Of a stretch of DNA of 64,000 nt, positions 10,816 to 64,000 are shown piece after piece. The position numbers and the translations under genes are program-made. The stretch covers positions 62,001 to 126,000 of the IMG/VR virus record IMGVR_UViG_3300032236_001613. One strand, written 5' to 3'. The notes beneath the pieces were generated by a model. It did no database searches. It was not told the DNA's origin and saw only the letters and a list, made by a program, of their open reading frames with translations. The stretch's first letter is position 1. Every line of letters begins with the position of its first letter.

Positions 10816-11355
10816 TCAAGTAATTTTTCTCGAAACAATAAAAGTATCATCTGCACAGTTATATAGCAATGATTCCTTAATTTGTTTCGATACGTTAAAA
10901 GTTTTCGGCATCTCGAACTCATCACTTCCTTGATTATTTTTAGCTCGTGCACCCGTATAACGAGTTTGAGATATTATATTCTTTAGATCATATCCTTTAG
11001 ACTTTGCATATTCTTTAATTTGTCGCTTTAACCACCTAATACCGGCGGTTCCTATGTCTACCCCATTATATTGAGTTCCTAAACTAGTATGAACAATTTT
11101 ATTGTTACTGGGATGGTCAACTGGTGCTATATTTCCAATGTCAATGGATCCATTTTTAGAAAGTGAGAATGACGCAATTACCAATGGTCTATTGCTAGAC
11201 TTTTCAATCACTTTGGCATAATAGTGCCCTGGTATATCCTTAACTTGTTCGAAAGTAATAGATAGCTCTTGTTCTGGATTCTTATACGATTCTAGTATCA
11301 ATATTGAATTAATGTTGATAAAAAAGAATTTGCTTTCTATTTCATGTAGTCTCAT
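10816..11355 (-). CDS. AT-rich late-type protein with capsid-targeting-like N-terminus
   Basis: MRLHEIE start; TAAATA box at 11374-11379; AT-rich. Confidence 0.7.
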   Translation of the reverse strand: MRLHEIESKFFFININSILILESYKNPEQELSITFEQVKDIPGHYYAKVIEKSSNRPLVIASFSLSKNGSIDIGNIAPVDHPSNNKIVHTSLGTQYNGVDIGTAGIRWLKRQIKEYAKSKGYDLKNIISQTRYTGARAKNNQGSDEFEMPKTFNVSKQIKESLLYNCADDTFIVSRKIT

Positions 11356-11384
11356 TCCTACGACCTTTTGCTATATTTAACTCC

Positions 11385-12029
11385 TTAGTGTGCATAGTAG
11401 CTAGTGTTCTGTACGCTGTCGTCCCAGCAGGCGCGGCAGTTACCGCACTCATTGTCTTGAAAGCGGCTAGGGCAATCGTAGCCGTGTGCAGCACCATTCT
11501 TATGCACGGTTGAGGTATGCTCAAAGCCCTTAGGCGGCTCTGCGTCCATTTGCTGGGCACTCATACGGATTACAAGATTGCGTGGACGGCTGCGAAGTCG
11601 AAGGAACTCGCGCACCATACCAAACTCACGGGTAGGCAACCAATGCTCAACCCAAGGAGTCTGCTCTGCTACTTCGGCAATCATCTGCAAGTGATCTACA
11701 CTCTGCAGGTCGCCGCTATCGTGCCAACGGAAGTGTGTTTCACCTTTCAGTAGGCGCACCATAGCAGCAATCCAAGTGTCGCGAGTAACAGTATTGAGCA
11801 GAGCTTCTGCCAAACGAGCATGACGACGGTTGTGTGCTGCCTTAGTGTTGGGTAGTGAATACATTCCGCGCATAGCGTAACACTGGTGGCAGGTGCTGCC
11901 TTCTACTTGGCGCAGGATGCTACCAGTTTGGCAACGGGTAGCACTAAGCCCAAAGCTCTTGCCCGGCATTTTGCTAGGATTGCTGAGTCCACCAACAAAC
12001 TCTGCTGCCTCTGCTTTGGTCCTAAACAT
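11385..12029 (-). CDS. Gp88-like phage protein (Cys-rich)
   Basis: LSNPSKMPG.SF.L.A..C..G..L, C..CYA, FRWHDSGDL, HWLPTRE, C..C..CW; start moved to ATG 12029. Confidence 0.75.
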   Translation of the reverse strand: MFRTKAEAAEFVGGLSNPSKMPGKSFGLSATRCQTGSILRQVEGSTCHQCYAMRGMYSLPNTKAAHNRRHARLAEALLNTVTRDTWIAAMVRLLKGETHFRWHDSGDLQSVDHLQMIAEVAEQTPWVEHWLPTREFGMVREFLRLRSRPRNLVIRMSAQQMDAEPPKGFEHTSTVHKNGAAHGYDCPSRFQDNECGNCRACWDDSVQNTSYYAH

Positions 12030-12083
12030 AGCCAACTCCTTACTGTTACTGTAGGAATAGTATACTATGGTTTTACCAAAAGG

Positions 12084-12527
12084 TCAAGCCAATTCTTTCT
12101 TCTTGGCTCGGACTCGGGCTGTTCCCTTCTTAGTATGACGCACCATGCGAGCGTAACGATGCTGCCCCATCAAGATTTGGATACGACCTTCAAACCCGTC
12201 CTTAATAGGAACGCTCCCAGTTTCAATTTTGAAGTTGTTCTTGTCAAACCACTGAAGCCACTCGTAAAGTTCGGCTTCGGCTTCCTCACCGCGGCTCAAT
12301 ACTGCCACGCAGGGATGCTTATGATAGGCGTTCTCCGGACACCAAACGACGCCATTCTTATCTGCTCGTTTGTAGTCCTCGTCGTACCATGCATAGTCTG
12401 GATAATTACCGTCGACTACAATGCCCACGCAATGCCGCCCGATGCCTACTTCGCCTTCGAGATCCAGTTGACAGTTATTCTTAGCAGCCCAAACCGCCAT
12501 CCAAGTAATCTTTTCATCGCGTGTCAT
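12084..12527 (-). CDS. Hypothetical protein
   Basis: Own promoter and AGGAG RBS. Confidence 0.75.
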   Translation of the reverse strand: MTRDEKITWMAVWAAKNNCQLDLEGEVGIGRHCVGIVVDGNYPDYAWYDEDYKRADKNGVVWCPENAYHKHPCVAVLSRGEEAEAELYEWLQWFDKNNFKIETGSVPIKDGFEGRIQILMGQHRYARMVRHTKKGTARVRAKKKELA

Positions 12528-12923: not shown

Positions 12924-12987
12924 AGACAGTCTCCTTTTGCTATGAGTATATTATAACAGGTTTTACCAAAAAGTCAAGACCTGTGTT

Positions 12988-13353
12988 CTAAAGAGTCAAA
13001 CCTTCGACACCATTTTTCCGAGGTTGCCAGATACACTGGCTCCACTGAACTAGTTCTCGGTCATTCCTGTCATCGTAGGGTTCTAACCATGCCACAGGCA
13101 CCGCGTAAGACATAGGCCTGCCACTATGAGTGGAAGTTCCCCGATCAATCTGCCTACCGTCGGCCAGCACAGCAGTGAGGTCGTGCACGTCACAGGTGAT
13201 GCGTTGCCCGCCTGTTGTCTCTACAGTGGCGTGCCTGGCAGGTGCTCGCACCACAGCGTATTGCAGTTCATCGGGCGGTGGCGTGCCCTGCTGGTCAATC
13301 TGAATCACACGGACCCGTTGTCCAACTTTAAATCCCGTACTCATATTAAACAT
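12988..13353 (-). CDS. Hypothetical protein (FKVGQRV / WSQCIWQP)
   Basis: Own promoter and RBS; motifs shared with 2459..3001. Confidence 0.7.
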   Translation of the reverse strand: MFNMSTGFKVGQRVRVIQIDQQGTPPPDELQYAVVRAPARHATVETTGGQRITCDVHDLTAVLADGRQIDRGTSTHSGRPMSYAVPVAWLEPYDDRNDRELVQWSQCIWQPRKNGVEGLTL

Positions 13354-13405
13354 TTTCTCCTTGCTAGTGTCTGTGTATTATAGCAGGTTTTACCAAGAAG
13401 TCAAG

Positions 13406-13640: not shown

Positions 13641-13643
13641 TAA

Positions 13644-13928: not shown

Positions 13929-14002
13929 ATTAATTGCTCCTTACAAAAAAGTGTTTAAACTCTAACTCAACAGAACTATTATACTAAACTTTTACCAAAA
14001 GG

Positions 14003-14164: not shown

Positions 14165-14173
14165 GTCTGCTCC

Positions 14174-18521: not shown

Positions 18522-18899
18522 TTACTTACTAGATGTCTGGACGAAGTGAGCTTGAGACCTATAGCCTAGTTCGCGTAGGCTAGTATTAATCAACTGCATG
18601 ACCGTCTTAGAAACGGGCGTGTCTGTTCTTGGAGGTTGAATACTCCAGGGCATTCCTCGCTCTTTGGGTTTCAAAAATGGATATCGATACTTCTCACCAT
18701 TAGGGTAACGAAACTCTTGCCCAGTTTTTTTGAGCAAGGTATTGTAAAGCCAATAAAGCATGTTGCTACGCTGACGTGCACGATCGTAGATATCTTTAGA
18801 AGATTGATCAATCTGTTCGATACCCCGACGCAAGGCACTGAGAGCTAATGCTTGAAGCTCGGGGTCTGGGTTACTTTCTAACAGTTCTTGTATCTGCAT
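18522..18899 (-). CDS. Late protein with capsid-targeting-like N-terminus
   Basis: MQIQELLE; TAAATA 4 nt upstream of ATG. Confidence 0.75.
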   Translation of the reverse strand: MQIQELLESNPDPELQALALSALRRGIEQIDQSSKDIYDRARQRSNMLYWLYNTLLKKTGQEFRYPNGEKYRYPFLKPKERGMPWSIQPPRTDTPVSKTVMQLINTSLRELGYRSQAHFVQTSSK

Positions 18900-19771: not shown

Positions 19772-20947
19772 ATGCGCATCCAAGAGCTACTATTAGAATA
19801 CAACCGACAGATTACCCTACAAAAGATAGGCGATCAGCTGACTCAAACAGCAGCTAGAGAACACACTACTGCAGAAGAGGCTATAGCTGCACTGGAAGAA
19901 ATGGATCCAACCGCAAATAAACAGTATACTCCTTGGCTGGCACGACAATACATTAAGCAGCAGTTTAGATTAGAGGACGCAGATAGAATACGCACAGTAC
20001 TAGATAACTTTGGTCAACTTAAATCAAGACTACCTGTTGAACAAAGAGATATAGGACGTATGGATTTTTACCAACTTGATGATTTAATTAATCAAGTATT
20101 AGATGTTAAACTAGAGGTGGATAAGCCTATTGAAGGAGGTACTTTCCCTATAGTTCCTGACTCCCGAGTCTTATACAACGGACCATTAGGGCAATTAGCT
20201 ATACCAGAAACCCGAGAAGCCAGTTGCGAATTAGGTCGTGGTACTGAATGGTGTACGGCTTATACAAAATCAAATAATCAATTTGATAGTTATAATCGAA
20301 GAGGTCCTTTATACGTATGGCGAGACAAAAATGGTGAGAAATATCAATTCCATTTCAGCGGCGGCCTACAAATGATGGATAGTCGAGATCGCCCTATAGA
20401 AAAAGATAAAATAGATTATTTTAGAAAACAGCATCCTGTACTTAAAAAATTGTTTCGACAAATAGAATCTCAAGCGTTAAAAGACCCTATATTAGCAACT
20501 CAGTATGCCGAAAAAGTAATTGGAGGACGTTGGCCCGAAGGCGAGGCCACAATAGCACAAACCTCACAGGCAGCATATTACTACGCTCGAAAAATAATCA
20601 AAAGTCGGTTTCCTGAGGGGGAAGCAGCATTATTAGAACCATCAACTGACATTAATTTTCTAATTTTTTATGCCGAACAAGTAATCAAAGGTCGTTGGCC
20701 TGAAGCTGAAGAAATGATAGCACAAAACCCATCGGCAGCATTTTACTACGCCCGACACATAATCAAAGGTCCTTTTCCTGAGGGGGAAGACGCAATAGCT
20801 CAAGATGACAGGCTCGCTTACAACTATGCTGTAGAAATACTTAAAGATCGTTTCCTAAAAGGAGAAAAGACTCTACAAAAGAGCAATGTTTATTGGTACC
20901 ATTACAAAAAACATTTCGGAATAAAACAACGTAAAGGTAAAACCTAA
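19772..20947 (+). CDS. Putative internal head protein with C-terminal helical repeats; paralog of 23127..24458
   Basis: MRIQELLLE; DPT..K.YT.WL, WCTA..N.F..Y..GP.Y, GEKYQFHF; ~6 repeats of A..YA..IIK.RWPEGE..I. Confidence 0.85.
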   Translation: MRIQELLLEYNRQITLQKIGDQLTQTAAREHTTAEEAIAALEEMDPTANKQYTPWLARQYIKQQFRLEDADRIRTVLDNFGQLKSRLPVEQRDIGRMDFYQLDDLINQVLDVKLEVDKPIEGGTFPIVPDSRVLYNGPLGQLAIPETREASCELGRGTEWCTAYTKSNNQFDSYNRRGPLYVWRDKNGEKYQFHFSGGLQMMDSRDRPIEKDKIDYFRKQHPVLKKLFRQIESQALKDPILATQYAEKVIGGRWPEGEATIAQTSQAAYYYARKIIKSRFPEGEAALLEPSTDINFLIFYAEQVIKGRWPEAEEMIAQNPSAAFYYARHIIKGPFPEGEDAIAQDDRLAYNYAVEILKDRFLKGEKTLQKSNVYWYHYKKHFGIKQRKGKT

Positions 20948-20949: not shown

Positions 20950-22125
20950 ATGCGTATCCGAGAACTAATTGATCACTCACACCCTATAGTTTACTTAGAC
21001 ATGGACGGAGTATTGGCAGACTTTGATCACGGTTATCGCGAACTATCTGGGCAAGATCCTAAAGACACATTTATACCTAATCCTAAAGATGATCCTGTGC
21101 TTAGCCGAATGATTGGCACAGATTTCTTTGCTAGATTACCTAAGTACAAGACAGCGGATCGGCTAGTTCAAATGGTGGTGGATCGATTTGGATCTTACTC
21201 TATATGCTCAAGCCCATTACGCGGCGATCATGATAACAGTGAGCACAATAAAAAACAATGGATACAGCAACATCTTAATCCACAACCTGCATCCATAGTT
21301 ATAACTGGTAGAAAAGAAAAATACGCTATACGTAATGGAGTTCCGAACATCTTGATTGACGATAAGTCATCTAATATTGCTAAATGGACTGCTAAAGGTG
21401 GAATAGGCATACTCTATTACGCTCCTAGAGATTCTTTAAATCAAGTGGCTAAAGTTCTTGATCAGTCTTTAAACGAAGAAAAAATCGAGTTCGATCCTGC
21501 TGATCCCGAACATGAAGAACAGTTTCTTAGACCTAAAGAGTTTCGTAAACAGGGCGCATACTCTTATGTAACTCATCATCCTAGTCATGATCCACATATG
21601 GTTCAAAAGACAGATCGTACCGCTTTACCACCTGAACAGAATCCTTTTTATCAATATGCTCGAGCAATTGCTACAGCAGAAAAACGTAACACTAACCCAT
21701 ACTTGCCTAGAGTACGAGTAGTTGATGCCGAAGAAACAGATTGGGGTGGCGTAGTCTTTACTTACGAATGCGAAAGATTACATGACTTTACCGAAGTAGA
21801 ACACCAGTTGGGCGAAGATGTAGTTGTAAACATAGGCAGAAAAATGTTTAATGATTACGACACATTATCACGAAATTACATTAGAGACCACAGAGGTGAT
21901 AACCTCAATGCTTGGGAAGTATTAGCAGGAATATTGCACTTTATGCAAGTAGGACATAAATGGAATTGGGTTAAAGACCCATTATTCAAACAGGCACTAG
22001 ATATTCTAAAGGAAATTGACGAGCAGACTGGTAACTTCTTTCAATGGGATTGGAAGGCAGATAACCTAATGATTAGGTTCACCAGTAAAGGTCCTCAGCT
22101 AGTGCTTACGGATCCGTTAAGTTAA
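20950..22125 (+). CDS. HAD 5'(3')-deoxyribonucleotidase fused to a T7 gp0.7-like protein kinase domain
   Basis: YLDMDGVLADF and LIDDK (HAD); QGAYSYV..K, PYLPRV, WDWKADNLM, LTDP (kinase). Confidence 0.75.
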   Translation: MRIRELIDHSHPIVYLDMDGVLADFDHGYRELSGQDPKDTFIPNPKDDPVLSRMIGTDFFARLPKYKTADRLVQMVVDRFGSYSICSSPLRGDHDNSEHNKKQWIQQHLNPQPASIVITGRKEKYAIRNGVPNILIDDKSSNIAKWTAKGGIGILYYAPRDSLNQVAKVLDQSLNEEKIEFDPADPEHEEQFLRPKEFRKQGAYSYVTHHPSHDPHMVQKTDRTALPPEQNPFYQYARAIATAEKRNTNPYLPRVRVVDAEETDWGGVVFTYECERLHDFTEVEHQLGEDVVVNIGRKMFNDYDTLSRNYIRDHRGDNLNAWEVLAGILHFMQVGHKWNWVKDPLFKQALDILKEIDEQTGNFFQWDWKADNLMIRFTSKGPQLVLTDPLS

Positions 22126-22467: not shown

Positions 22468-23130
22468 ATGCGTGCACAAGAAGTATTTGAATCTTATAGA
22501 TGGAGCTGGTCAGACGATGATGCAGAACAGCTCTCTAGTAAGATCCCACCCAAATATCTAGAAAGATTACGTAATCTCACTGTCCGGGATCGACGAGTTA
22601 GCAACTTTATGGATACCCATAACATTAACTTGGTTCAATTTCTCACAAGATTTCAGGAACAAAAGGGTTTAGATCCAGTAAACAAAACTGAGTTAGCATC
22701 TGATTTTATTGTTAAGATTCCGAAAAATAATCCTGAAGGTTTTTATTTTGCAAATAAATCTAATGAAGTTAGAGCCGGTGCCGAATTAGATATTGCAGAT
22801 CAAGCACATACAGATCTATATCGCGTTTATATGAAGACCAAACTTCGCGCAGAAAAGATAAACACTCCATTTACATTAACATTAAAAGAAGCCGCCGACA
22901 TCTTTAAAGCACAGGGAGGCAAATGTGCATTAACTGGAGAAAAGTTAGGAAAAGGACTAGGATCATCACCCAGTATGGATCAACGAGTTCCTAGAGTGAG
23001 AGGCGGCCCTGGTTATACTAAAGACAATGTACAATGGGTTACCGCACAGATTAACTTTGCTAAACAGAATTTAACTAATGAAGAATTTGCAGATCTTTGT
23101 AAAAAAGTTGCTGCACATTCCGGGAATTAG
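22468..23130 (+). CDS. HNH-like (bba-Me) endonuclease domain protein
   Basis: QGGKCALTG..SPSMDQ..GYTKDNVQWV..IN.AK; N-terminus MRAQEVFE. Confidence 0.7.
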   Translation: MRAQEVFESYRWSWSDDDAEQLSSKIPPKYLERLRNLTVRDRRVSNFMDTHNINLVQFLTRFQEQKGLDPVNKTELASDFIVKIPKNNPEGFYFANKSNEVRAGAELDIADQAHTDLYRVYMKTKLRAEKINTPFTLTLKEAADIFKAQGGKCALTGEKLGKGLGSSPSMDQRVPRVRGGPGYTKDNVQWVTAQINFAKQNLTNEEFADLCKKVAAHSGN

Positions 23131-24458
23131 AGTCTGTACCATTTGTCCTTTAACTTTACTAAAAACCTCGATACAGTTTGATACGCATAATGGCCATCAT
23201 ACTCTGTAGGCCCCGATTCCATGTCCCGAATAAGTTCGTTCACAGTATCTTTGAATTGCCTACGATATGTTAAGTCTGCTTGATCTGCGTTGCCTAAGGT
23301 CTTGATTTCATGCTTTCCTGGACCATCCGTGGGTAGATAATAGCGATCAGCTACAACTACTACAGCAGAAAAATCAGGTGGAAATATGGCATATACAAGT
23401 TGGGATGCTTTTTGTCCACGACTGGGTGCAACTCTGAGTGTTTGTAAAAAAGAACCCATATGTACATTAAAAAGTTCTTCAAAAGGATCAACCAACTCCC
23501 ATTCAAACATACCACTTTCTACTAGAATGCAAGAGTACATGCCATTTTCTAATTGACGAGCTTTCCATTTAAGATATTGTTTTGTATGGTTTAATCCATT
23601 ATAAGATGGCTTACGTGGTGGCTTTAACCAACTTAAACGATATTCTTTAGCTTGGTCTGCAAAGATTTTTGATAGCTCAGGAAACCTTCTAACTAGACTG
23701 CTGCCCCACTCACTAATGTCATTATCATGTTCGTCCATAAACTGGTGGCTAGGAAAATGAAACTGGTATTTTTCCCCAGTATGTACAGGCTGTCTAGGTA
23801 TTATAATATACATAGGACCATCTTGGTTATAGCTGTTAAACATGTTGTTGTTTGTAGCAGCTGTACACCAACGAGTGTTCTGCCCATAAAAGCAAGCTGC
23901 TTCTCGATCATTTGGTTTTATAACAATTAGACGATCATCACGAAATACTTCATCGTAATCGCCGCGGGGTGACTTCTGCTTTTGGTCATCTCTACGACTT
24001 CTGACTGCAGAAAAAGCGTTATATAACGTTCTAAAATTATAAGCGTTAATATCTCTAAGATTAGTTAATCTGCGACGTTTGTAGTCATCAAATTTTTCTA
24101 GAGAATCTGTAATCTCAGTAGCTACATCTTCTGCATGCATCGCGTCCTTACAATAGTTTTTTATTAACCATTGAGTGTATTCTTTATGTGGGGTGGGATC
24201 CATTAATTCAAAAATATTTACTAAGATTTTTTTAGACTCAGCTTCGATTGCATGGCGAGGATTATCATAGTCGTTGTGTTCGTCATAGGCCATACATAAA
24301 ATACTGTACCCTCTTTCACTAAGTAGGTCAGCAGATTTTAGACGTTGTATGTGATTATAACTTTCCAATTCAAAGAAATGTTTATACAACTTATCACCAT
24401 AATTCTTAACGGTGATTTCATGATTATATTCGACAAGGAACAGTTCGTTGAGTAACAT
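23127..24458 (-). CDS. Putative internal head protein; paralog of 19772..20947
   Basis: MLLNELFLVE; DPTPHKEYTQWL, WCTAATNNNMFNSYNQDGPMY, GEKYQFHF. Confidence 0.85.
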   Translation of the reverse strand: MLLNELFLVEYNHEITVKNYGDKLYKHFFELESYNHIQRLKSADLLSERGYSILCMAYDEHNDYDNPRHAIEAESKKILVNIFELMDPTPHKEYTQWLIKNYCKDAMHAEDVATEITDSLEKFDDYKRRRLTNLRDINAYNFRTLYNAFSAVRSRRDDQKQKSPRGDYDEVFRDDRLIVIKPNDREAACFYGQNTRWCTAATNNNMFNSYNQDGPMYIIIPRQPVHTGEKYQFHFPSHQFMDEHDNDISEWGSSLVRRFPELSKIFADQAKEYRLSWLKPPRKPSYNGLNHTKQYLKWKARQLENGMYSCILVESGMFEWELVDPFEELFNVHMGSFLQTLRVAPSRGQKASQLVYAIFPPDFSAVVVVADRYYLPTDGPGKHEIKTLGNADQADLTYRRQFKDTVNELIRDMESGPTEYDGHYAYQTVSRFLVKLKDKWYRL

Positions 24459-24460: not shown

Positions 24461-24871
24461 TTAGGCCTGATCTGCATCCATCACATCACAAGTAAGTGGC
24501 CAAGGTCCACGATGCGGCGGGCGTTGCATTGCTTTATAATGATCATAATTGGTATTGGCTGCAGCATGATTTTCGATGTTACTTGCTACTGTTTCGGCAA
24601 TGTCTCTATTGCTGTAACTAGCAACTGGTGCCCACCCTTGCCCGTGTGCTTGATGTACACGGCGTGCAGCTTCCCCAGGGCTTAATCTAGTACCTGCTAC
24701 TACAGCTTCGACTACTACTTCAAATGGTGTAACTGCATCATTTAGGATTACTACTGTAAATCCTCCAGGGACGTATAGTGGTACTTCTTGTCTTTGACGA
24801 ACTGTTGGACGATCAACTACTGTATCATCGTCAGTATCTACTGGTGCTTCAACTAATTCTTGTATACGCAT
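24461..24871 (-). CDS. clpS: ATP-dependent Clp protease adaptor ClpS
   Basis: VVILNDAVTPFEVVV, EA.RRVHQAH.QG, AET, PLTC motifs of the ClpS fold. Confidence 0.8.
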   Translation of the reverse strand: MRIQELVEAPVDTDDDTVVDRPTVRQRQEVPLYVPGGFTVVILNDAVTPFEVVVEAVVAGTRLSPGEAARRVHQAHGQGWAPVASYSNRDIAETVASNIENHAAANTNYDHYKAMQRPPHRGPWPLTCDVMDADQA

Positions 24872-24875: not shown

Positions 24876-25268
24876 TTATGCCACCGTTGGTCTTATGGAT
24901 TTTTGTAATCCTTGTATATTTTTACCTAGATCGTCTTGATCTTTTTGTATTTGTTGACTTTTTTGTACAATTGCATCAAGTTCTTTCTGTTGTTCTGGGT
25001 TGTTAGCTAGTGGTAGACCTTCGGGATTTTTAAGAGCTTGTTTGGCAAGATTGTATCCGCCGGAAAATGCTCCAGCAGCACTGCCCATTTTAGCTGCTCC
25101 TACCTGTGCATTTGCCACAGTAGAACCCAATGCTGATCCAACTTTGCCAGCTAACTTACTAGCAATACCACCACTGCCTGGCGTATCTGTACTACCTGCT
25201 GTCGGAGTTCCAATAGTAGTAGTTCCACCCTGTTCAATTAAGTCAATATAATATCTTAGGTTTTTCAT
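24876..25268 (-). CDS. Gly/Ala-rich putative head protein
   Basis: MKNLRYYIDLIE; late box 5 nt upstream. Confidence 0.75.
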   Translation of the reverse strand: MKNLRYYIDLIEQGGTTTIGTPTAGSTDTPGSGGIASKLAGKVGSALGSTVANAQVGAAKMGSAAGAFSGGYNLAKQALKNPEGLPLANNPEQQKELDAIVQKSQQIQKDQDDLGKNIQGLQKSIRPTVA

Positions 25269-25306: not shown

Positions 25307-25498
25307 ATGCGCATACATGATTTATTAGAAAACTTTGCAGATGGTAAAGGTCCAGGACGTCCAGGCGATAGTCAACGTCATGGTATTCCAAAGAAAGCCA
25401 CAATGGCTCAGCTACAGAAAGCTGCTCGAGCTAAAGGACGTAAAGGACAATTAGCACGTTGGCAAATTAATATGCGTCGTGGTAAGAAGAAAAAGTAA
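25307..25498 (+). CDS. Small basic putative head protein (NFADGK type)
   Basis: MRIHDLLE-NFADGKGPGRPG; K/R-rich; late box. Confidence 0.8.
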   Translation: MRIHDLLENFADGKGPGRPGDSQRHGIPKKATMAQLQKAARAKGRKGQLARWQINMRRGKKKK

Positions 25499-25707: not shown

Positions 25708-26280
25708 TTATCCCCAGCTAATACTAGCTCCATTTTCTTGAGCAAATTTTACCATTTTGATCAGTGCATCAATATATCTATCAATTTGACTTTGACTACG
25801 ACCCACATCTATCATTCTAGGACCAGTATGTCCGATATGTGTAACACCTTGATCGTCAGTATGCTGGCGGCCCATAGGACCACGTTCATCACTAGGGTCC
25901 TGAGTATATTGGCTAGTATTTTGATTCTTTAACTGGATAAGTCTACGCATAAGCTTAGGTAGATCTTGATGATGTATTATGCCCGAATAGTCAGTATCTG
26001 TAATTCCTAGCATACGTTGTATCTCAAACCCGTTGGAATTACTTACACTTAGTTCAGGAGCACTAGAAACCCATTCTTCGGTTTCTCCCGCACCATCACA
26101 GCGTCTGCATGTTTCTTCGCCGGTACTCCACCGCTGTTTTCCTGTGCCATCACATACAAAACAAGGCTCCATTTGTTTGCTTTGCCATTCCATACTGGAC
26201 CAAACTTTATCCCCGTCATAATCTGTTAATTTTACAGGGTTAAAGGTCATGCCTTCAATTAATAAATCTTTAATACGCAT
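25708..26280 (-). CDS. Zinc-finger (CxxCxGxG x2) putative head protein
   Basis: MRIKDLLIE; CFVCDGTG, CRRCDGAG. Confidence 0.8.
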   Translation of the reverse strand: MRIKDLLIEGMTFNPVKLTDYDGDKVWSSMEWQSKQMEPCFVCDGTGKQRWSTGEETCRRCDGAGETEEWVSSAPELSVSNSNGFEIQRMLGITDTDYSGIIHHQDLPKLMRRLIQLKNQNTSQYTQDPSDERGPMGRQHTDDQGVTHIGHTGPRMIDVGRSQSQIDRYIDALIKMVKFAQENGASISWG

Positions 26281-27160: not shown

Positions 27161-27424
27161 ATGAGAGCAAGAGACTTCATCACTGAAAAGAAACGTAAAA
27201 TTAAATCGCCTACACGTAGCCAATGCTCAGTAGGCAAATCTACTATGAGCAACGTAAGACGCTCACAGTGTGTTTCACTAGGATATCTAGCACATGATTC
27301 CGATCATACTATGGGTACAGGTACTCAGGGTAAAAAAGGTACAGGAGTACCACTTAGAGGTAAAAAAGCTAAGAGTGAAAAGCATGGTGGTCCTGTTAAA
27401 AACTACGGCGGTAGCCACAGCTAA
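27161..27424 (+). CDS. Small basic putative head protein
   Basis: MRARDFITE; K/R/G-rich; TATAAATA 5 nt upstream. Confidence 0.75.
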   Translation: MRARDFITEKKRKIKSPTRSQCSVGKSTMSNVRRSQCVSLGYLAHDSDHTMGTGTQGKKGTGVPLRGKKAKSEKHGGPVKNYGGSHS

Positions 27425-27457: not shown

Positions 27458-28012
27458 ATGTATAACTTTATAAAATATGTCACTGAAGGCCGCAAAGAAC
27501 GACTAGAACAAGTTACGCTACCCTATGATCGTAATGATTTAGGTAATAGCCTAAGCAAAGATACGCTAGATTTACACTACGGTAAACTTTACAAAGCATA
27601 TGTAGATAGATATAATAAAGGTGAAGGTGACGATGATTTTAACGAAGCTGGTGCTTTCCTACATGCTATATACTTCACACAGTTCCGTTCACTAACTAGC
27701 AATAATCAACCTACAGAGCAAAGTTTAGAATTTGTTGAACAACATTTTAAATCATTTGAAAACTTTAAGAAAGAATTCTTAAAAACTGCTATGGGCATAC
27801 AAGGAGCAGGATGGGTTTACTTAGCCCGTAATGGCGAGCTTAAAACAATTAAGAATCACGAAATTAGAAAAGACATTGTACTATTGATTGATTGGTGGGA
27901 ACATTCGTTTCTGATTGACTTCGGTAGTGACAAAGAGAAATACCTAGAAGGCCAATGGCGCATTATTGATTGGACAAAAATAAACTATCTCTTGACAGGT
28001 ATGTCTAAGTAA
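27458..28012 (+). CDS. sod: Fe/Mn superoxide dismutase
   Basis: Metal ligands LH(YGK), FLH, DWWEH; L..LPY..; G.GW..L. Confidence 0.9.
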   Translation: MYNFIKYVTEGRKERLEQVTLPYDRNDLGNSLSKDTLDLHYGKLYKAYVDRYNKGEGDDDFNEAGAFLHAIYFTQFRSLTSNNQPTEQSLEFVEQHFKSFENFKKEFLKTAMGIQGAGWVYLARNGELKTIKNHEIRKDIVLLIDWWEHSFLIDFGSDKEKYLEGQWRIIDWTKINYLLTGMSK

Positions 28013-45877: not shown

Positions 45878-46090
45878 ATGAGGGCAGCAGAGTTTATGAG
45901 AGCTATTGCAGACGTTATCGACAAGCTCGATGGCAAAGAATCTGAGCCCGAAGTTAAAGGTCCTTTAGAGCGTGATGTATTTGTTCCCCCTTTACAGACT
46001 AAAATTGAAATAATGAAGAAAATGGCCGATGTGCCACAGAAGAACGCAGATTTATTAGCGGCGGATGACGACGATCCACTAGATGGCTAA
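45878..46090 (+). CDS. Small late protein
   Basis: MRAAEF start; FVPPLQ.K.E motif. Confidence 0.7.
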   Translation: MRAAEFMRAIADVIDKLDGKESEPEVKGPLERDVFVPPLQTKIEIMKKMADVPQKNADLLAADDDDPLDG

Positions 46091-58964: not shown

Positions 58965-61900
58965 ATGAAAAAGATCAAAATAGCGATTATAGACTGCGTA
59001 GGTCTTAACTACGATGGAACAACTTTACAGAAAAAAGGCATCGGCGGCTCAGAAAGTTCAATCATTTCTGTAGCAAAAGAACTAGTTGCACTAGACTTTG
59101 AAGTCTCAATTTTTAATGATTGTAACAGCCCAGATACTAAGCCCGGTATTTACGATGGTGTTAACTACTATCCTATTAGAACACTAGGTCAACGTGAGTT
59201 TGGCTTTGATATTGTTATCAGTCAAAGAACAGTAATACCATTTACTCCGCTTGAACTTTATGATCAAGTACGTCAGCCACCTCCTAGAGATTTTGATCCA
59301 AATATTTTCCGTCAAGTACAACGAACCGAACAGTTAAAGATCTTATGGCAGCAGGATACGTTTATTTGGGGTGATGCCTTACTTGAACAGTTATGTGTTA
59401 AAGGCTACATTGATGAGATTTTTAATCTCAGCGATTGGCACATTAGTTACACTACACATTCTAGTCACGGACCACGACGTAACTTTGAAGTATTAAAACG
59501 TTATATCTATCATACACGCAATGCTATTAATCGTTGGATAGATTGGGTTGATATTAAAAAGAAAGATCCTAACCTATTTGTCTATAATGCTTCGATTACT
59601 AAAGGTATGGTGCCTTTAGTACAAAAGATCTGGCCTAGACTTAAACAACATTTACCTAATGCTAAACTAAAAATTATCGGCGGTTATTATCGTTTCAATA
59701 ACGAACCAGTAAACGAGGCACAACAGAATTGGATTAACTTACAGAATTCTGTAGCACATGATAAGTCTGTCGAGTTTACAGGAATTATTCCGCAACCTAA
59801 GATTGCGGAAATTATGGCCGAAGCCAGTTACAATCTCTATCCCGGTGCATTTCCTGAAACATCAGGTATCAGCATTATCGAAAGTATCAACTATAATACA
59901 CCTATAATCGGTACACGCTTCGGTGCCATGGAAGAATCTGCAGCCGAAACAGCAGGTTACTATATCGATTTTCCAGTAGAGCCTAACGGACTATTTCCTA
60001 ATATTAACACCGACGATCAGGTTAATCGCTATGTTGATTTAGCATTGCGTGTTATAAGAGATCCTTACCTACATCAACAAAAGCAATATGCTTGCAATGC
60101 AGCTAAAGATGTTAGTACTTGGGATACAGTTGCATTACAATGGAAACAGCATTTTTATTATAAATTAGGATTAGAATTATCTGCCGAGGAACAACAGGCA
60201 GTCGATTGGATTAACTATCGTGTGCACAAAGTATTTGGTAAACGATTTGCTAATCCTGAAGAAGTTGTTGTTACCCAAAAACCCGAAAAGGTAACTGCAT
60301 TACCCGGACCACGTCCTAAGATTGCATTCGTTGATATTGTTGGCATGGCATACGATGGCGACACTCTTAATCGCAAGGGCATGGGCGGTAGCGAAAGTGC
60401 GGTTATTCTTAACAGTCGAGAACTAGCTAAAATTGGGCTTGATGTTACTGTGTTTAACGCTTGTAACGAAGATGGTAGTAGTCCTGGTATGTATGATGGG
60501 GTCACTTATCGACCTCTTGCAGATTTACAATCAACTACTGATGTTTTTGATGTAGTTATAAGCAGTCGTGTAGTTACACCTTTTATTACAGAACCATGGT
60601 ATAATTATCCCCAAACAACAAATAGAAAAATTGATTATCGTTGTTTTGAAAATATGCGTCGTAACGCAAAACTAAAAGTGTTTTGGATGCACGATACATT
60701 CTGTTGGGGCGATGACATTCTAGAAGATCTTGTTTGGACAGGTGCTATTGACGAAGTATGGACACTAAGTGACTTCCATGCATTCTATGTAATGAATGCT
60801 GCACATCCGCGCATGCGCATGATGGAAGTTATGCGTAGTCGCACATGGACTACTAGAAACGGATTAGTAAAATACTTTACTGAAGTAGACATTGCTGCCA
60901 AAGACCCTAACTTGTTTATATTCAACGCTAATATGAGCAAGGGCCTCGATCCTTTATTAAATCTTGTTTGGCCTCGAGTTGTAAAACAAATACCTAAAGC
61001 ACGTTTAACCGTAATTGGCGGCCATTATAAACTAGGTGCAGCATTTGCGCATAATGATGAAGAATCTGAGTTTATGAAGTTAGCTGGGCCGCACATGAAC
61101 AACCCTTCTATTACGTTTACAGGAATCATTAGTCAAAGAGAAGTTGCTGAAATTTCTGCAAAGGCTAGTTACTTCCTGTATCCAACTGCATTTCCTGAAA
61201 CTTACAGCATTAGCACACTAGAATCTCTGTACGCTAATACTCCTATGATCAGCTGTAGATTCGGTGCATTAGAAGAAACTGCTAGCCCCGAAGGCTACTT
61301 GATTGACTATTCCACAACACCGAATAGTTTATTTCCAAACGTTAATCCAGAAGAGCAAGCAGACCGTCTAGTTGAATTAGTTGTTAATGCATACAATAAT
61401 CCTAAAGAACACCAACGCAGAATGAAGGCATTAGATGTTATTAAAGATTTAGCCGGGTGGGATGTTGTTGCATTAGAATGGAAACAGCATATTTACAATA
61501 AGTTAGGCTTGTACTTAAGCCGTAGCGAAAGTCAGCAAGCTACTTACACTAAAAGCAAATATAGAAAAATCTTTAACCGTCGTATGACTACTGCTGAAGA
61601 ATGGCTCGTTCCTCCACAGGAATTATCCGATCAACAGAAGATGGTTATTATTAGTCCTTTTTACAATGCTGAACCTTACATCGAACGTTGTATTGCTAGC
61701 GTAGCAGCACAAGACTACGATCGTTACGAGCATTGGTTAATTGACGATGCTAGTACCGATAACGGATTTAAAGTTGCAGAAGATTATATCAATCAGCTAC
61801 CTGAAGAAATACAAAGTAAATTTAGACTAATCCGTAATGATGAAAACCAAGGTGCAGTCTATAATCATATGAGTGTTATTAGAGATTTAGATCCTAATGA

Positions 61901-63050
61901 TGTTATTATGATGTTAGACGGCGACGACAGTTTAATTAATCGTCCTGATGTATTAAGATACTTTAATGCTGTTCATTGGCATCACGATTTTACTTATGGG
62001 TCATGCTGGAGTATGGTTGATCAAATTCCATTAATCAGTCAGCCTTATCCTCCAGAAGTTATTGAATCTAGAGATTATAAAAACTATCATTTTAATTGGA
62101 AGATTCCGTATACTCATTTGAGAACAATGAAAGCCAAACTATTGTTAGAAGTTCCTAACGAGGCTTTCCAAGATAATCAAGGCAATTGGTTTAAAGCCGG
62201 CGGAGATAACTCTACGTTCTATAACGCATTGTATAATTGTGATCCTGATCGGATTTATGTGGTTCCTGATATTGTTTATAACTACAACGATGCAAGTCCT
62301 ATTAACGATTATAAGGTTAATAGAGAAGAGCAAGATCGAGCTATTTCGGTTATTTTTGGAAATAATGATCCTATTGATCGTGCACCAAAAAAACCCGAAA
62401 CAGTTAGCCAACCAATTGCATTATCAGCTCCTGCTGTAAATATCGGCCCGGCTAAACGTATTTTAATAGCTATTCCAACTAACAGAAATATTGAAGCTCA
62501 GACTTTTAAAAGTATATACGATTTAATTATACCCGACGGATACGTTGCTGAGTTTCAGTATTTCTGGGGATATCAAGTAGATCAAGTACGTAATCTAATT
62601 GCACACTGGACGATACACAATGGATACGATTACTTGTTTGCTGTTGATAGCGATATTTCGTTTGCACCAGACACATTAGTAAAACTATTATCGCATAATC
62701 GAGATATTGTTTCAGGTATATATATTCAACGCATTCCAGGAACACATATTATTGAAATTATGCGTAAAAATCCGCATGGTGGTGTTAGCCATGTTGATTG
62801 GAATACTATTAAAGGGCAAGGCTTAGTACCAATTGACGGATGTGGATTTGGTTGCGTACTAGTTAAATCTGAAGTGTTTAAAGCTATACCATATCCTCAC
62901 TTCCTATATCATAGTGCAATTGATCATAAAAATACTTTAAGTGAAGATGTTCATTTCTGTAATCAAGCTAGAGATAGAGGATTTACACTTTGGGCAGATA
63001 CTAGTGTAATTTGCGATCACACTGGATCTTGGACATTTAAGGTAAACTAA
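58965..63050 (+). CDS. Four-domain glycosyltransferase (GT4-like x2, GT2, GT-A)
   Basis: Duplicated KIA..D..G..YDG..L..KG.GGSES; P.YNAE.YI..C..S..DDASTD..LDGDD; VDSD..GFGC.L..EDVHFC. Confidence 0.9.
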   Translation: MKKIKIAIIDCVGLNYDGTTLQKKGIGGSESSIISVAKELVALDFEVSIFNDCNSPDTKPGIYDGVNYYPIRTLGQREFGFDIVISQRTVIPFTPLELYDQVRQPPPRDFDPNIFRQVQRTEQLKILWQQDTFIWGDALLEQLCVKGYIDEIFNLSDWHISYTTHSSHGPRRNFEVLKRYIYHTRNAINRWIDWVDIKKKDPNLFVYNASITKGMVPLVQKIWPRLKQHLPNAKLKIIGGYYRFNNEPVNEAQQNWINLQNSVAHDKSVEFTGIIPQPKIAEIMAEASYNLYPGAFPETSGISIIESINYNTPIIGTRFGAMEESAAETAGYYIDFPVEPNGLFPNINTDDQVNRYVDLALRVIRDPYLHQQKQYACNAAKDVSTWDTVALQWKQHFYYKLGLELSAEEQQAVDWINYRVHKVFGKRFANPEEVVVTQKPEKVTALPGPRPKIAFVDIVGMAYDGDTLNRKGMGGSESAVILNSRELAKIGLDVTVFNACNEDGSSPGMYDGVTYRPLADLQSTTDVFDVVISSRVVTPFITEPWYNYPQTTNRKIDYRCFENMRRNAKLKVFWMHDTFCWGDDILEDLVWTGAIDEVWTLSDFHAFYVMNAAHPRMRMMEVMRSRTWTTRNGLVKYFTEVDIAAKDPNLFIFNANMSKGLDPLLNLVWPRVVKQIPKARLTVIGGHYKLGAAFAHNDEESEFMKLAGPHMNNPSITFTGIISQREVAEISAKASYFLYPTAFPETYSISTLESLYANTPMISCRFGALEETASPEGYLIDYSTTPNSLFPNVNPEEQADRLVELVVNAYNNPKEHQRRMKALDVIKDLAGWDVVALEWKQHIYNKLGLYLSRSESQQATYTKSKYRKIFNRRMTTAEEWLVPPQELSDQQKMVIISPFYNAEPYIERCIASVAAQDYDRYEHWLIDDASTDNGFKVAEDYINQLPEEIQSKFRLIRNDENQGAVYNHMSVIRDLDPNDVIMMLDGDDSLINRPDVLRYFNAVHWHHDFTYGSCWSMVDQIPLISQPYPPEVIESRDYKNYHFNWKIPYTHLRTMKAKLLLEVPNEAFQDNQGNWFKAGGDNSTFYNALYNCDPDRIYVVPDIVYNYNDASPINDYKVNREEQDRAISVIFGNNDPIDRAPKKPETVSQPIALSAPAVNIGPAKRILIAIPTNRNIEAQTFKSIYDLIIPDGYVAEFQYFWGYQVDQVRNLIAHWTIHNGYDYLFAVDSDISFAPDTLVKLLSHNRDIVSGIYIQRIPGTHIIEIMRKNPHGGVSHVDWNTIKGQGLVPIDGCGFGCVLVKSEVFKAIPYPHFLYHSAIDHKNTLSEDVHFCNQARDRGFTLWADTSVICDHTGSWTFKVN

Positions 63051-63052
63051 TA

Positions 63053-63763
63053 ATGAAAATAGCTATTTTGGTTAGTGGTCAGCCAAGATTCCACAAAATG
63101 TCTTTCTACGATCACCTTACAAAGTTTAAAGGCTATAGTCAAGTTGATTGGTTTTTTTACATTTGGAAAAATAACGAAAACATCAAAAACATTCCGCCTG
63201 AATGGATCAATATTTCCGATGTTAATTGGGCTGTTGAAAAAATTAAAAAAAATCTACCTGTTAGCCATATACTTTCACGTTTTCATTTAGGAATGTATAA
63301 TATTCACGAATATCATACGTTGCCGTCAATTGGCTCAATAAATGCTATTAATTTACAATTTTATAGTTTAAAACAAGCCGATTTACTCCGTCAAGAAACA
63401 GAACAAACGTGGGGAAATTACGATTTAGTTGTTAGAACTAGGCTAGACAGAGAAATTACAAAAGAGATTAATCTAATAGAATTAAAAAACAAATTAGATT
63501 ATAACCCAAATCTCGTTTTCACACCAAATAATTACAAACATTATTATAATGAATATGGTATGTGTGACGCTTTTGCTATAACTTCTTCTAAAAATATGTC
63601 AATCTATAGTGATTTAATTAATTTTATTCCATCTTACTATCAGCAAGGGCTATATCCTCATCCTGAATCTTTGTTAAATTATCATTTAATAAAAAACTCT
63701 TTAGAATTAGACGAAACTTTGGAAATTAACCAATCATATAGCTACGAGTATGTAGACTGGTAA
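63053..63763 (+). CDS. Putative glycosyltransferase-related protein
   Basis: MKIAILVSGQPR..YDLVVRTRLD..D.FA..PE.LL. Confidence 0.6.
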   Translation: MKIAILVSGQPRFHKMSFYDHLTKFKGYSQVDWFFYIWKNNENIKNIPPEWINISDVNWAVEKIKKNLPVSHILSRFHLGMYNIHEYHTLPSIGSINAINLQFYSLKQADLLRQETEQTWGNYDLVVRTRLDREITKEINLIELKNKLDYNPNLVFTPNNYKHYYNEYGMCDAFAITSSKNMSIYSDLINFIPSYYQQGLYPHPESLLNYHLIKNSLELDETLEINQSYSYEYVDW

Positions 63764-63778
63764 TCATATAAATACAGG

Positions 63779-64000
63779 ATGTTACTACGTGAATTATTTG
63801 AAGACTCAAAAAACCCCGATTTAATAGAAATTTTTCGAAAATTTTTTCCTTTAGCTATGAAAGAAATTGGGCTAAAGGATTTACCCAAAATTGAATTAGT
63901 TGACCGTGTTCAAGACAGAGTTCAACCAACGTTTGGTAAATTTGTTAATAATACCAATACAATATATTTAGGAATTCTAAATCGTCATCCTTTAGATATA
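63779..64000 (+). CDS. Partial late protein with capsid-targeting-like N-terminus (runs off right edge)
   Basis: MLLRELFED..PTFG.F..I.L.I.NRHPLDI; TATAAATA 4 nt upstream. Confidence 0.75.
   Translation, partial: MLLRELFEDSKNPDLIEIFRKFFPLAMKEIGLKDLPKIELVDRVQDRVQPTFGKFVNNTNTIYLGILNRHPLDI

What the first reader, a model, noticed from the sequence alone, without database searches (positions are those of the whole stretch)
10816..64000. Cohort of about 14 proteins with a shared N-terminal capsid-targeting-like peptide: an injected host-takeover payload
Seen: MRLHEIE, MQIQELLE, MRIQELLLE, MRIRELID, MRAQEVFE, MLLNELFLVE, MRIQELVE, MKNLRYYIDLIE, MRIHDLLE, MRIKDLLIE, MRARDFITE, MYNFIKYVTE, MLLRELFE and variant MRAAEF. 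These sit on otherwise unrelated proteins (kinase/nucleotidase, ClpS, SOD, HNH, Zn finger, basic peptides), mostly behind late boxes. Known: T4 internal proteins carry a 10-residue capsid-targeting sequence (IPIII MKTYQEFIAE), are cleaved after Glu by gp21 and are injected with the DNA. Inference: a greatly expanded zip-code system that packages enzymes for action at time zero.
Basis: partly seen in the sequence, partly recalled or inferred. Interest (0 to 1): 0.85.

Follow-up and report, generated by a model that had tools for sequence, protein, structure and literature searches.

The report
Shared capsid-targeting-like tag on phage proteins
An uncultured giant phage puts nearly the same 8-9-residue N-terminal peptide on a dozen or more unrelated proteins, several of them enzymes. 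The peptide closely resembles the short T4 leader peptides that load proteins into the capsid and are cut off by the head protease, so the phage probably packs a protein toolkit into its head, though this has not been shown.

Summary
All 14 strings sit at ORF starts. Eleven fit M-[RKQL]-[ILA]-x-[ED]-[LIVF]-x(1-3)-E: 12/86 genes match a loose pattern against 0.12 expected, and 1/223 internal Met. MKNLRYYIDLIE is an alternative form also found on ClpS orthologues. The SOD string MYNFIKYVTE is a family-wide extension. MRAAEF is not a member. Conservation is at the peptide level, since codons vary synonymously, and the tag is a disordered add-on. The window comes from a 328-kb jumbo-phage contig distantly related to Pseudomonas phage PA5oct. 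The same contig encodes a T4 gp21-type prohead protease (Peptidase_S77) and a gp23-type capsid protein. The tag amounts to two tandem gp21 cleavage motifs (hydrophobic-x-Glu). A matrix built from these tags ranks T4 gp24 and Alt, both known gp21 substrates, first among T4 N-termini. In PA5oct, 7 of 12 tag-like proteins are virion-associated by mass spectrometry, against 20% background; the PA5oct SOD homologue, which carries only the SOD-type extension, is also detected. Seven tagged genes have an ATAAATA late-promoter box 4-6 nt before the ATG. The best reading is an expanded T4-type capsid-targeting/propeptide system. Packaging, cleavage and injection are untested, and the 'kinase' call is unsupported.

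The parts
10816..11355 (-). 179-aa ORF starting MRLHEIE; function unknown; the only tagged gene inside the early block
   Evidence: PWM 13.2; independent PWM 5.7. No Pfam or PHROG hit. TTAAATA 18 nt upstream plus an SD-like GGA.
18522..18899 (-). 125-aa ORF starting MQIQELLE; function unknown
   Evidence: ATAAATA ends 4 nt before the ATG. PWM 13.3.
19772..20947 (+). 391-aa protein starting MRIQELLLE; PcfJ/DUF4116-like repeat protein; homologue of PA5oct virion protein EST35_0205
   Evidence: ATAAATA ends 5 nt before the ATG. Relatives in 8 other IMG/VR contigs keep the tag.
20950..22125 (+). 391-aa protein starting MRIRELID; N-terminal 5'-deoxynucleotidase (NT5C) domain; C-terminal half unassigned. 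Asp replaces the second Glu.
   Evidence: Pfam NT5C E 5.7e-8, residues 12-159. PHROG 2643. No late box: the gene starts 2 nt after the stop of 19772-20947. The L006 orthologue starts M-MRINEV.
22468..23130 (+). 220-aa protein starting MRAQEVFE; endonuclease VII / HNH-like C-terminal domain
   Evidence: PHROG 1035 endonuclease VII E 2.5e-17. TATAAATA ends 6 nt before the ATG.
23127..24458 (-). 443-aa paralogue of 19772-20947 starting MLLNELFLVE
   Evidence: BLASTP E 1.7e-26 to 19772-20947. No box; operon-internal.
24461..24871 (-). 136-aa ClpS adaptor homologue starting MRIQELVE
   Evidence: Pfam ClpS E 2.5e-10, residues 38-107. 30 of 44 orthologue clusters carry the canonical tag. In the AF2 model residues 1-18 have pLDDT <50 and the core is >86.
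24876..25268 (-). 130-aa Gly/Ala-rich protein starting MKNLRYYIDLIE (alternative tag form)
   Evidence: CTAAATA ends 5 nt before the ATG. The same alternative form is found on ClpS orthologues P0022, P0023 and P0027.
25307..25498 (+). 63-aa very basic protein starting MRIHDLLE
   Evidence: ATAAATA ends 6 nt before the ATG.
25708..26280 (-). 190-aa protein starting MRIKDLLIE with a CxxCxGxG zinc-finger-like segment
   Evidence: Weak DnaJ_CXXCXGXG hit, E 0.001. ATAAATA ends 5 nt before the ATG.
27161..27424 (+). 87-aa basic protein starting MRARDFITE
   Evidence: TATAAATA ends 5 nt before the ATG. Independent PWM 17.1, the top hit of the window.
27458..28012 (+). 184-aa Fe/Mn superoxide dismutase with a ~15-residue N-terminal extension MYNFIKYVTEG (family-specific form ending V-T-E)
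   Evidence: Pfam Sod_Fe_C 7e-20 and Sod_Fe_N from residue 20. The extension is conserved in the best 120 of 1551 homologues. The PA5oct homologue EST35_0261 starts MNDSIKKYISIAE and is ESI-MS/MS positive. The L006 homologue starts MRDIINLIE.
45878..46090 (+). 70-aa ORF starting MRAAEF: not a member of the cohort
   Evidence: It matches the loose pattern only. PWM <4. It has no hydrophobic-x-Glu pair and sits inside the tail-fibre operon.
63779..64000 (+). Start of a 426-aa glycoside hydrolase family 19 protein beginning MLLRELFE (runs off the window)
   Evidence: Full gene in L098:10727-12007; Glyco_hydro_19 E 2e-10. TATAAATA ends 4 nt before the ATG.

Best explanation
The shared N-terminus is most likely a T4-type prohead-targeting leader peptide.

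Anatomy. Its consensus is M-[RK]-[ILV]-x-E-[LI]-x-E. That is two back-to-back copies of the hydrophobic-x-Glu motif after which gp21-family (Peptidase_S77) prohead proteases cut.

Inferred mechanism:
1. The genes are transcribed late, most from their own ATAAATA promoter placed so close to the ATG that the mRNA would be leaderless or nearly so.
2. The exposed, disordered tag binds the assembling scaffold core of the prohead.
3. The prohead protease then removes the tag.
4. This frees the cargo inside the head, among it small basic proteins, a ClpS adaptor, an SOD, a nucleotidase, a nuclease-like protein and a GH19 wall hydrolase.

Shown here: the motif, its peptide-level conservation, its add-on and disordered nature, its late-box association, a T4-type protease and capsid on the same contig, its resemblance to known T4 gp21 substrates, and enrichment of tag-like proteins in the virion proteome of a cultured relative.

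Inferred only: binding to the core, cleavage, retention in the mature head, ejection into the host, and any early function.
For: (1) Non-chance N-terminal motif on unrelated proteins.

(2) Peptide-level selection. Arg2 is AGA/AGG/CGT/CGC, Ile3 is ATA/ATC/ATT, and Leu is CTG/CTA/TTA across members. Among the 30 ClpS orthologue clusters that carry the canonical tag (of 44 clusters), Glu5 is invariant (30/30) and position 6 is L/I in 29/30, while the linker behind it varies in sequence and in length, 16-31 aa.

(3) The tag is an add-on. The Pfam domains start after it, and AF2 models ClpS residues 1-18 at pLDDT <50 against >86 for the core.

(4) Same contig. L120:662-1291 is Peptidase_S77 (E 2.9e-25), 34% identical to T4 gp21 (E 5e-19). 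L120:2422-3597 is Gp23 (E 1e-96). A 67-aa ORF starting MRINELIFE follows the capsid gene.

(5) A PWM from these tags ranks gp24 (MAKINELLRE) and Alt (MELITELFDE) first among annotated T4 starts. Both are gp21-processed head proteins. gp21 cuts after L/I-X-E, and 10-residue leaders suffice for capsid targeting (PMC9026906; PMC3012670).

(6) PA5oct has an S77 protease. 7 of 12 tag-like annotated proteins are ESI-MS/MS virion proteins against 93/461 overall (p ~0.004). They include the 73-aa protein next to the portal (MKINDIITE) and the homologue of 19772. The SOD homologue, which is not among those 12 because it carries the SOD-type extension, is also ESI-MS/MS positive.

(7) In 69 related contigs the small gene just upstream of the scaffold-like and protease genes (after the portal in PA5oct) starts MKLFEMFD-like.

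(8) ATAAATA is the predicted late promoter of Rak2-like phages, which encode a gp55-like sigma (PMC5259590). In the window it is absent from the early block and sits in front of tagged genes.
Against: - No proteomic, N-terminal or transcript data exist for this phage.
- The T4 IPIII targeting sequence itself scores only 2.1 with the PWM.
- The best T4 match, gp24, is a shell protein, so the tag need not mean internal or ejected cargo.
- 5 of 12 PA5oct tag-like proteins were not detected in virions. The score threshold was chosen after seeing the list. The PA5oct virion list also includes RNR and thymidylate synthase, so it is noisy.
- PA5oct ClpS has no tag and is MS-negative.
- One tagged gene lies in the early block (10816-11355).
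- MRIRELID ends in Asp, which in T4 blocks processing.
Confidence: 0.6

Rival explanations
1. The conserved start is an RNA-level or translation signal for leaderless, Shine-Dalgarno-less late mRNAs, and the peptide is a by-product.
For: - 7 tagged genes have the late box 4-6 nt before the ATG and no SD.
- T4 late promoters place the box about one helical turn upstream of the start site (PMC2988020), so these mRNAs would begin at or next to the AUG.
- The same arrangement holds in 63 of 69 related contigs for the small tagged head gene.
Against: - Codons of the conserved residues vary synonymously, including AGA versus CGT.
- Tags are equally conserved on operon-internal genes without a box: 20950, 24458, 24871 and 7 of 8 tagged genes in L009.
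- Box-plus-ATG genes without the tag exist: 51580, 58965, L103:10339.
- In 6 relatives the same tagged gene has a 16-21-nt leader with an SD.
Confidence: 0.08
2. The tag is an N-terminal recognition signal for something other than the capsid. Candidates are a degron or handle for the phage's own Clp/FtsH-type proteolysis, or another localisation signal.
For: - Relatives such as PA5oct encode ClpX, ClpA, ClpP, ClpS and FtsH.
- One tag carrier is itself ClpS.
- The tag is disordered and exposed.
- 5 of 12 PA5oct tag-like proteins are not in the virion list.
Against: - The motif is acidic/hydrophobic with the exact gp21 cleavage grammar.
- It best matches known T4 gp21 substrates.
- It marks the small head gene next to the scaffold/protease genes in 69 contigs and the MS-detected PA5oct protein next to the portal.
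- I know of no described degron with this sequence (own knowledge).
Confidence: 0.15
3. The shared start is a hitch-hiking 'promoter plus first codons' cassette spread by recombination or duplication, with no function of its own.
For: - The tagged genes are clustered (18.5-28 kb; a second island upstream in L104).
- Many share a box-ATG-tag unit.
- Two carriers are paralogues.
Against: - The nucleotide sequences of the tags differ widely while the residues are kept.
- ClpS orthologues at 50-70% identity keep the tag although the adjoining linker has diverged.
- Tags occur without the box.
Confidence: 0.04

Closest known systems
T4 capsid targeting sequence (CTS) of internal proteins IPI/IPII/IPIII (MKTYQEFIAE)
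   Same: - A ~10-residue extreme N-terminal peptide on otherwise unrelated proteins.
- Hydrophobic positions followed by a hydrophobic-x-Glu site cut by the gp21-family protease.
- Small basic proteins are among the carriers.
- The concept that T4-like phages use it to load diverse proteins (PMC9026906, PMC3012670).
   Different: - Sequence similarity to the IP CTS itself is weak (PWM 2.1).
- The tag here is 8-9 residues with two tandem sites.
- The cohort is several-fold larger: at least 16 strong hits in ~170 kb.
- It includes recognisable enzymes (ClpS, SOD, NT5C, GH19, nuclease-like).
- Function is untested here.
T4 Alt (MELITELFDE) and gp24 (MAKINELLRE) N-terminal propeptides
   Same: - Best sequence matches in the T4 proteome. 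K-I-N-E-L-L-x-E is nearly the tag of PA5oct gp150 (MKINDIITE) and of window gene 25708-26280 (MRIKDLLIE).
- Alt is an enzyme packaged in the head and injected.
- A tagged ADP-ribosyltransferase-like protein exists in this genome (L104:4647-5444).
   Different: - gp24 is a capsid vertex protein, not cargo.
- The ART assignment here is weak (PARP E 0.003; DarT-like TM 0.52).
- No processing data.
phiKZ / 201phi2-1 / SPN3US inner-body and ejection proteins
   Same: - Jumbo phages that package many proteins in the head.
- A gp21-related protease that cuts after Glu (PMC9026906).
   Different: - Those cleavage motifs are S/A-X-E.
- From my own knowledge, their propeptides are long rather than a shared short N-terminal tag.
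- This phage belongs to the PA5oct/Rak2-related, T4-core lineage with a bona fide Peptidase_S77 and Gp23.
Encapsulin cargo-loading peptides
   Same: It works alike in principle: a short terminal peptide directs unrelated enzymes into an HK97-fold shell (own knowledge).
   Different: Encapsulin peptides are usually C-terminal, are not cleaved, have an unrelated sequence, and involve no DNA packaging or ejection.

Membership tests
T4-type capsid-targeting / gp21-cleaved N-terminal leader peptide | Short peptide at the extreme N-terminus shared by otherwise unrelated proteins | tested here: met
   11 canonical carriers in the window, only one paralogous pair. 1/223 internal-Met matches.
T4-type capsid-targeting / gp21-cleaved N-terminal leader peptide | Leader ends in the protease motif hydrophobic(L/I)-x-Glu | tested here: met
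   L-L-E, L-V-E, V-F-E, L-I-E, I-T-E, L-F-E and V-T-E at residues 6-12 in 12 of the 14 strings; MRLHEIE has it only at residues 3-5 (L-H-E). An additional [ILA]-x-[ED] at residues 3-5 in the canonical tags. MRIRELID has Asp. Motif definition from PMC9026906.
T4-type capsid-targeting / gp21-cleaved N-terminal leader peptide | Genome encodes a gp21-family prohead protease with a gp23-type capsid | tested here: met
   Same IMG/VR contig: Peptidase_S77 E 2.9e-25, 34% identical to T4 gp21; Gp23 E 1e-96.
T4-type capsid-targeting / gp21-cleaved N-terminal leader peptide | Late expression together with head genes | tested here: inconclusive
   ATAAATA boxes precede tagged genes and are absent from the early block. 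The box is the predicted late promoter in Rak2-like phages. No transcript data; one carrier lies in the early block.
T4-type capsid-targeting / gp21-cleaved N-terminal leader peptide | Carriers are physically present in virions | not testable with these tools
   Indirect only. In PA5oct 7/12 tag-like proteins are ESI-MS/MS positive against 93/461. The homologues of 19772 and of the SOD are positive.
T4-type capsid-targeting / gp21-cleaved N-terminal leader peptide | Leader removed after Glu in the mature particle | not testable with these tools
   Needs N-terminal sequencing or semi-specific MS searches. No supplementary peptide tables were held for the PA5oct paper.
T4-type capsid-targeting / gp21-cleaved N-terminal leader peptide | Leader is sufficient to encapsidate a foreign protein | not testable with these tools
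   Requires a tag-reporter packaging assay.
T4-type capsid-targeting / gp21-cleaved N-terminal leader peptide | Sequence resemblance to the T4 leaders themselves | tested here: inconclusive
   The PWM ranks gp24 (7.3) and Alt (6.9) first among annotated T4 starts, but IPIII scores only 2.1, and three internal Met sites score as high or higher.
phiKZ-like inner-body protein propeptides | S/A-X-E cleavage motif | tested here: not met
   The motif defined for the phiKZ-like phages is S/A-X-E. The tags here are 8-12 residues with L/I/V-x-E, and the protease is a canonical Peptidase_S77.

The most novel reading that the evidence does not exclude
A very abundant lineage of uncultured jumbo phages uses a short, transferable capsid 'zip code' to load a changeable set of enzymes into the head and deliver them with the DNA. 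The lineage's head protease family has >8000 database members. The candidate cargo includes a ClpS adaptor, an SOD, a nucleotidase, a wall hydrolase, a nuclease-like protein and a possible ADP-ribosyltransferase. That would be a protein-injection arsenal far broader than the few T4 internal proteins. The tagged genes would also be expressed from leaderless late mRNAs.
Probability: 0.4. Interest if true: 0.75.

Novelty: new variant of a known kind. Interest (0 to 1): 0.6.

Why it matters
If the tag is a working capsid-targeting peptide, three things follow.
1. A simple sequence rule would predict the packaged, and possibly injected, proteome of a large and globally common group of uncultured jumbo phages directly from metagenomes.
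2. It would point to unexpected pre-made cargo. A ClpS adaptor could redirect host ClpAP, an SOD could blunt oxidative defences, and a GH19 hydrolase could help entry.
3. It would offer a second, shorter targeting tag for loading foreign proteins into phage heads, as is already done with the T4 CTS.

It also makes a specific, cheap prediction for an existing model phage. PA5oct gp150, gp205, gp230, gp238, gp261, gp380 and gp381 should start after a Glu in virions.

Tried and rejected
- A megablast of 24 kb against GenBank phages found no close relative. The only hit was a 76-nt match that turned out to lie in a group I intron.
- Looking for this genome's protease with the search for related loci and the search for homologous proteins failed. 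The family is too abundant (>590 loci, >8000 proteins) and the listings are capped.
- Walking downstream of the window reached RNR genes, not head genes.
- The head module was finally reached by walking upstream through neck/sheath/terminase synteny and jumping across the contig break in a collagen-like fibre gene.
- The PA5oct paper has no supplementary tables held, so peptide-level N-termini could not be checked.
- The 'T7-like promoter' idea for the early block is rejected. The 24-nt string occurs once. The recurring element looks like TATAAT plus a conserved TAGCAAGGAG leader.
- The 'kinase' reading of the 20950-22125 C-terminus is rejected. It has no Pfam or PDB sequence hit.
- MRAAEF is rejected as a member.
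- L104:7753 (MRIYEISRRDFLKG) is rejected as a tag. It is a Tat signal.
- Pfam on the L009, L029 and L071 tagged proteins gave almost nothing.
Full report
WHAT THE WINDOW IS
The window is 100% identical to part of IMGVR_UViG_3300032236_001613, a 328,068-bp viral contig, starting at about contig position 62,001. It is also carried on a 330,421-bp ENA scaffold. It has three parts:
- 1-18.5 kb: a minus-strand block of small genes with strong AAGGAG ribosome sites.
- 18.5-31.6 kb: a mixed block.
- 31.6-64 kb: very large fibre-like genes.

No GenBank phage is close at the DNA level. By protein the nearest cultured relatives are the PA5oct group of Pseudomonas jumbo phages.

THE OBSERVATION
All 14 strings lie at the first ATG of real ORFs.
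- A loose pattern, M-[RQLK]-[ILAV]-x-[ED]-[LIVFM], is met by 12 of 86 called genes against 0.12 expected (p ~1e-20). It is met by only 1 of 223 internal methionines.
- A position-weight matrix (PWM) gives 11 window genes scores of 10-17, all at gene starts.
- A matrix trained only on tags from other contigs returns eight window tags as the top eight of 435 candidate ATGs.
- Distribution is skewed: 1/49 genes in the early block, 9/21 in the 18.5-31.6 kb block.
- All-against-all BLASTP finds only one paralogous pair, 19772-20947 and 23127-24458 (E 2e-26). Everything else shares nothing but the tag.

The carriers are:
- an NT5C nucleotidase
- a ClpS adaptor
- an Fe/Mn SOD
- an endonuclease VII-like protein
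- a zinc-finger-like protein
- two small, very basic proteins
- a Gly/Ala-rich protein
- a GH19 hydrolase
- proteins of unknown function

MRAAEF is not a member, and the 'kinase' label has no support.

PEPTIDE OR NUCLEOTIDE SIGNAL?
The conserved residues are encoded by different codons in different members: Arg by AGA, AGG, CGT or CGC; Ile by ATA, ATC or ATT; Leu by CTG, CTA or TTA. So selection acts on the peptide.

Orthologues confirm this. Of 44 ClpS clusters retrieved from public data, 30 start with the canonical tag. Within those 30:
- Glu5 is present in 30/30.
- L/I is at position 6 in 29/30.
- I/L/V is at position 3 in 28/30.
- R/K is at position 2 in 26/30.
- A second Glu is at 8 or 9.
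Meanwhile the linker to the ClpS core varies in sequence and in length, 16-31 residues.

Several other ClpS orthologues carry MKTLREYIDLIE-type starts. This validates the window's 'weak' MKNLRYYIDLIE as an alternative form.

The tag is an add-on. Pfam domains begin after it. An AlphaFold2 model of the ClpS homologue has residues 1-18 at pLDDT <50 against 86-98 for the core.

THE SOD START
This is a special case. MYNFI[KR]x[VIL]xEG is conserved in nearly all of the best 120 of 1551 homologues. More distant homologues start MRDIINLIE (L006) or MNDSIKKYISIAE (PA5oct). All end in hydrophobic-x-Glu.

LINK TO T4-TYPE HEAD ASSEMBLY
PA5oct encodes a Peptidase_S77 (T4 gp21-type) protease between a T4-like portal and capsid gene.

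For the window's own genome I walked upstream through an island of further tagged genes, then DnaB, RecA, terminase, sheath, gp13 neck and gp15, in synteny with PA5oct. I then crossed the contig break, which lies in a collagen-like fibre gene.

The other end of the same IMG/VR contig encodes:
- Peptidase_S77 (E 2.9e-25), 34% identical to T4 gp21 (E 5e-19).
- A Gp23-type capsid protein (E 1e-96).
- Directly after the capsid gene's terminator, a 67-aa ORF starting MRINELIFE.

gp21 cuts after L/I-X-E. Mature T4 head proteins lose N-terminal propeptides of 7-65 residues. The first ten residues of IPIII suffice for capsid targeting. An Asp at the cleavage position blocks processing but not targeting (PMC9026906; PMC3012670).

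The tag here reads as two tandem such motifs, [ILV]-x-E then [LI]-x(1-2)-E.

Scanning the whole T4 genome with the tag matrix puts gp24 (MAKINELLRE), Alt (MELITELFDE) and the alt.-1 duplicate first among annotated starts. IPIII (MKTYQEFIAE) is weaker at 2.1, and three internal Met sites score as high or higher.

EMPIRICAL CHECK IN A CULTURED RELATIVE
The PA5oct GenBank record flags virion proteins found by ESI-MS/MS, 93 of 461 genes (PMC7318152).

Among annotated PA5oct starts scoring >=2 with the matrix, 7 of 12 are flagged (binomial p ~0.004; flags). They include:
- gp150: 73 aa, MKINDIITE, immediately after the portal.
- gp205: homologue of window gene 19772.
- gp238: (V)KIKDILVE.
- gp380 and gp381.
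The PA5oct SOD homologue gp261, which is not one of those 12, is also flagged.

Caveats:
- The threshold was chosen after inspection.
- Small proteins are easily missed.
- The list also contains obvious non-structural enzymes.
- PA5oct ClpS has no tag and is not flagged.

In 69 related metagenomic contigs, the small gene just upstream of the scaffold-like and protease genes starts MKLFEMFD-like. In PA5oct the equivalent gene follows the portal.

PROMOTERS
All nine NATAAATA boxes in the window lie within 34 nt upstream of a gene start, and none is in the early block. Seven end 4-6 nt before the ATG of a tagged gene that lacks a Shine-Dalgarno sequence.

ATAAATA is the predicted late promoter of Rak2-like jumbo phages, which encode a gp55-like sigma (PMC5259590). 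T4 late boxes sit about one helical turn upstream of the start site (PMC2988020). These genes would therefore give leaderless or near-leaderless mRNAs. This is an inference.

The tag and the leaderless layout are separable:
- Tags occur on operon-internal genes without a box: 20950, 24458, 24871 and most of L009.
- Box-plus-ATG occurs on untagged genes: 51580, 58965, L103:10339.
- Six relatives give the tagged head gene a normal leader.

SIZE OF THE COHORT
In the ~170 kb of this genome that I could read, 16 ATG sites score >=10, and all are gene starts. They are 11 in the window, one just downstream (L098:19778), three in an upstream island (L104), and the one beside the capsid gene.

The L104 island includes a 265-aa protein with a weak PARP hit (E 0.003) and DarT-like structural neighbours (TM 0.52). 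This is a possible parallel to T4 Alt, but only a lead.

VERDICT
The most likely mechanism is an expanded T4-type prohead-targeting and propeptide system (confidence about 0.6). Ejection into the host and action 'at time zero' are plausible by analogy with T4 Alt, the internal proteins and CTS fusions, but they are untested. The T4 gp24 precedent shows the tag need not imply injection.

I found no description of this system for the PA5oct/Rak2-related lineage in the papers searched, including a 2026 jumbo-phage review. The concept itself is established for T4, so I rate this a new variant of a known kind.

Noticed in passing
window 18904-18910(-), 19760-19766, 22456-22462, 25295-25301, 26286-26292(-), 27149-27155, 63768-63774; also 51569-51575 and 58952-58958: ATAAATA/TTAAATA late-promoter-like boxes end only 4-6 nt before the ATG of genes that lack a Shine-Dalgarno sequence. 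This implies leaderless or near-leaderless late mRNAs. The same layout holds for the small head gene in 63 of 69 related contigs, while 6 have a 16-21-nt leader with an SD.
   Followed up: partly
window 19308-19493 (-): A group I intron (Rfam RF00028, 64 bits, above the gathering score) sits in the ~870-nt ORF-free spacer between two divergent tagged genes, and I could not recognise any flanking exons. It explains the only megablast hit, to an uncultured marine phage.
   Followed up: partly
window 240-314 (-) and 22131-22208 (-): tRNA-Lys(UUU) and tRNA-Met(CAU) genes. The tRNA-Met lies inside the tagged-gene island.
   Followed up: no
window 12924-16130 (-), upstream of several early genes: A recurring early-gene upstream element, TATAAT(A)-N5-10-(C)TAGCAAGGAG: a -10-like box plus a conserved leader with a strong SD. 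At first glance it resembles a T7-type promoter, but the full 24-nt string occurs only once.
   Followed up: partly
L104:3772-7753 (same genome, about 10-17 kb upstream of the window): A second island of tagged genes: MQIQELLLE (DUF6934), MRLNELLLE (265 aa, weak PARP/DarT-like, a possible ADP-ribosyltransferase) and MRIYEVITRD (346 aa). Next to them is a Tat-signal protein whose start only mimics the tag.
   Followed up: partly
L098:14206-15597 (same genome, about 4-5.6 kb beyond the window end): Two adjacent genes with faint or weak multihaem cytochrome c hits (Cytochrome_C7/CIII) and signal-peptide-like starts, which is unusual cargo for a phage.
   Followed up: no
L106:1594-4170 (same genome): The large terminase gene carries a LAGLIDADG domain (probably an intein or homing-endonuclease insertion).
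   Followed up: no
L109:3-1526, L111:10001-11269, L120:7514-19051 (same genome): Both assemblies of this phage break inside a collagen-like GYTGSIGYYGS-repeat fibre gene. A 3845-aa ORF lies about 4 kb downstream of the capsid gene. Similar repeat-bearing fibre genes occur in the window at about 46-58 kb.
   Followed up: partly
window 58965-63050 (+): A 1361-aa protein with two glycosyltransferase family 1 domains and one family 2 domain lies among the fibre genes, behind a TTAAATA box 6 nt from its ATG.
   Followed up: no
window 28039-28703 (+): A secreted His-rich 111-aa protein followed by an IscA-type Fe-S assembly protein (Fe-S_biosyn, E 1e-17), next to the SOD. Together they form a small metal/redox gene group.
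   Followed up: no
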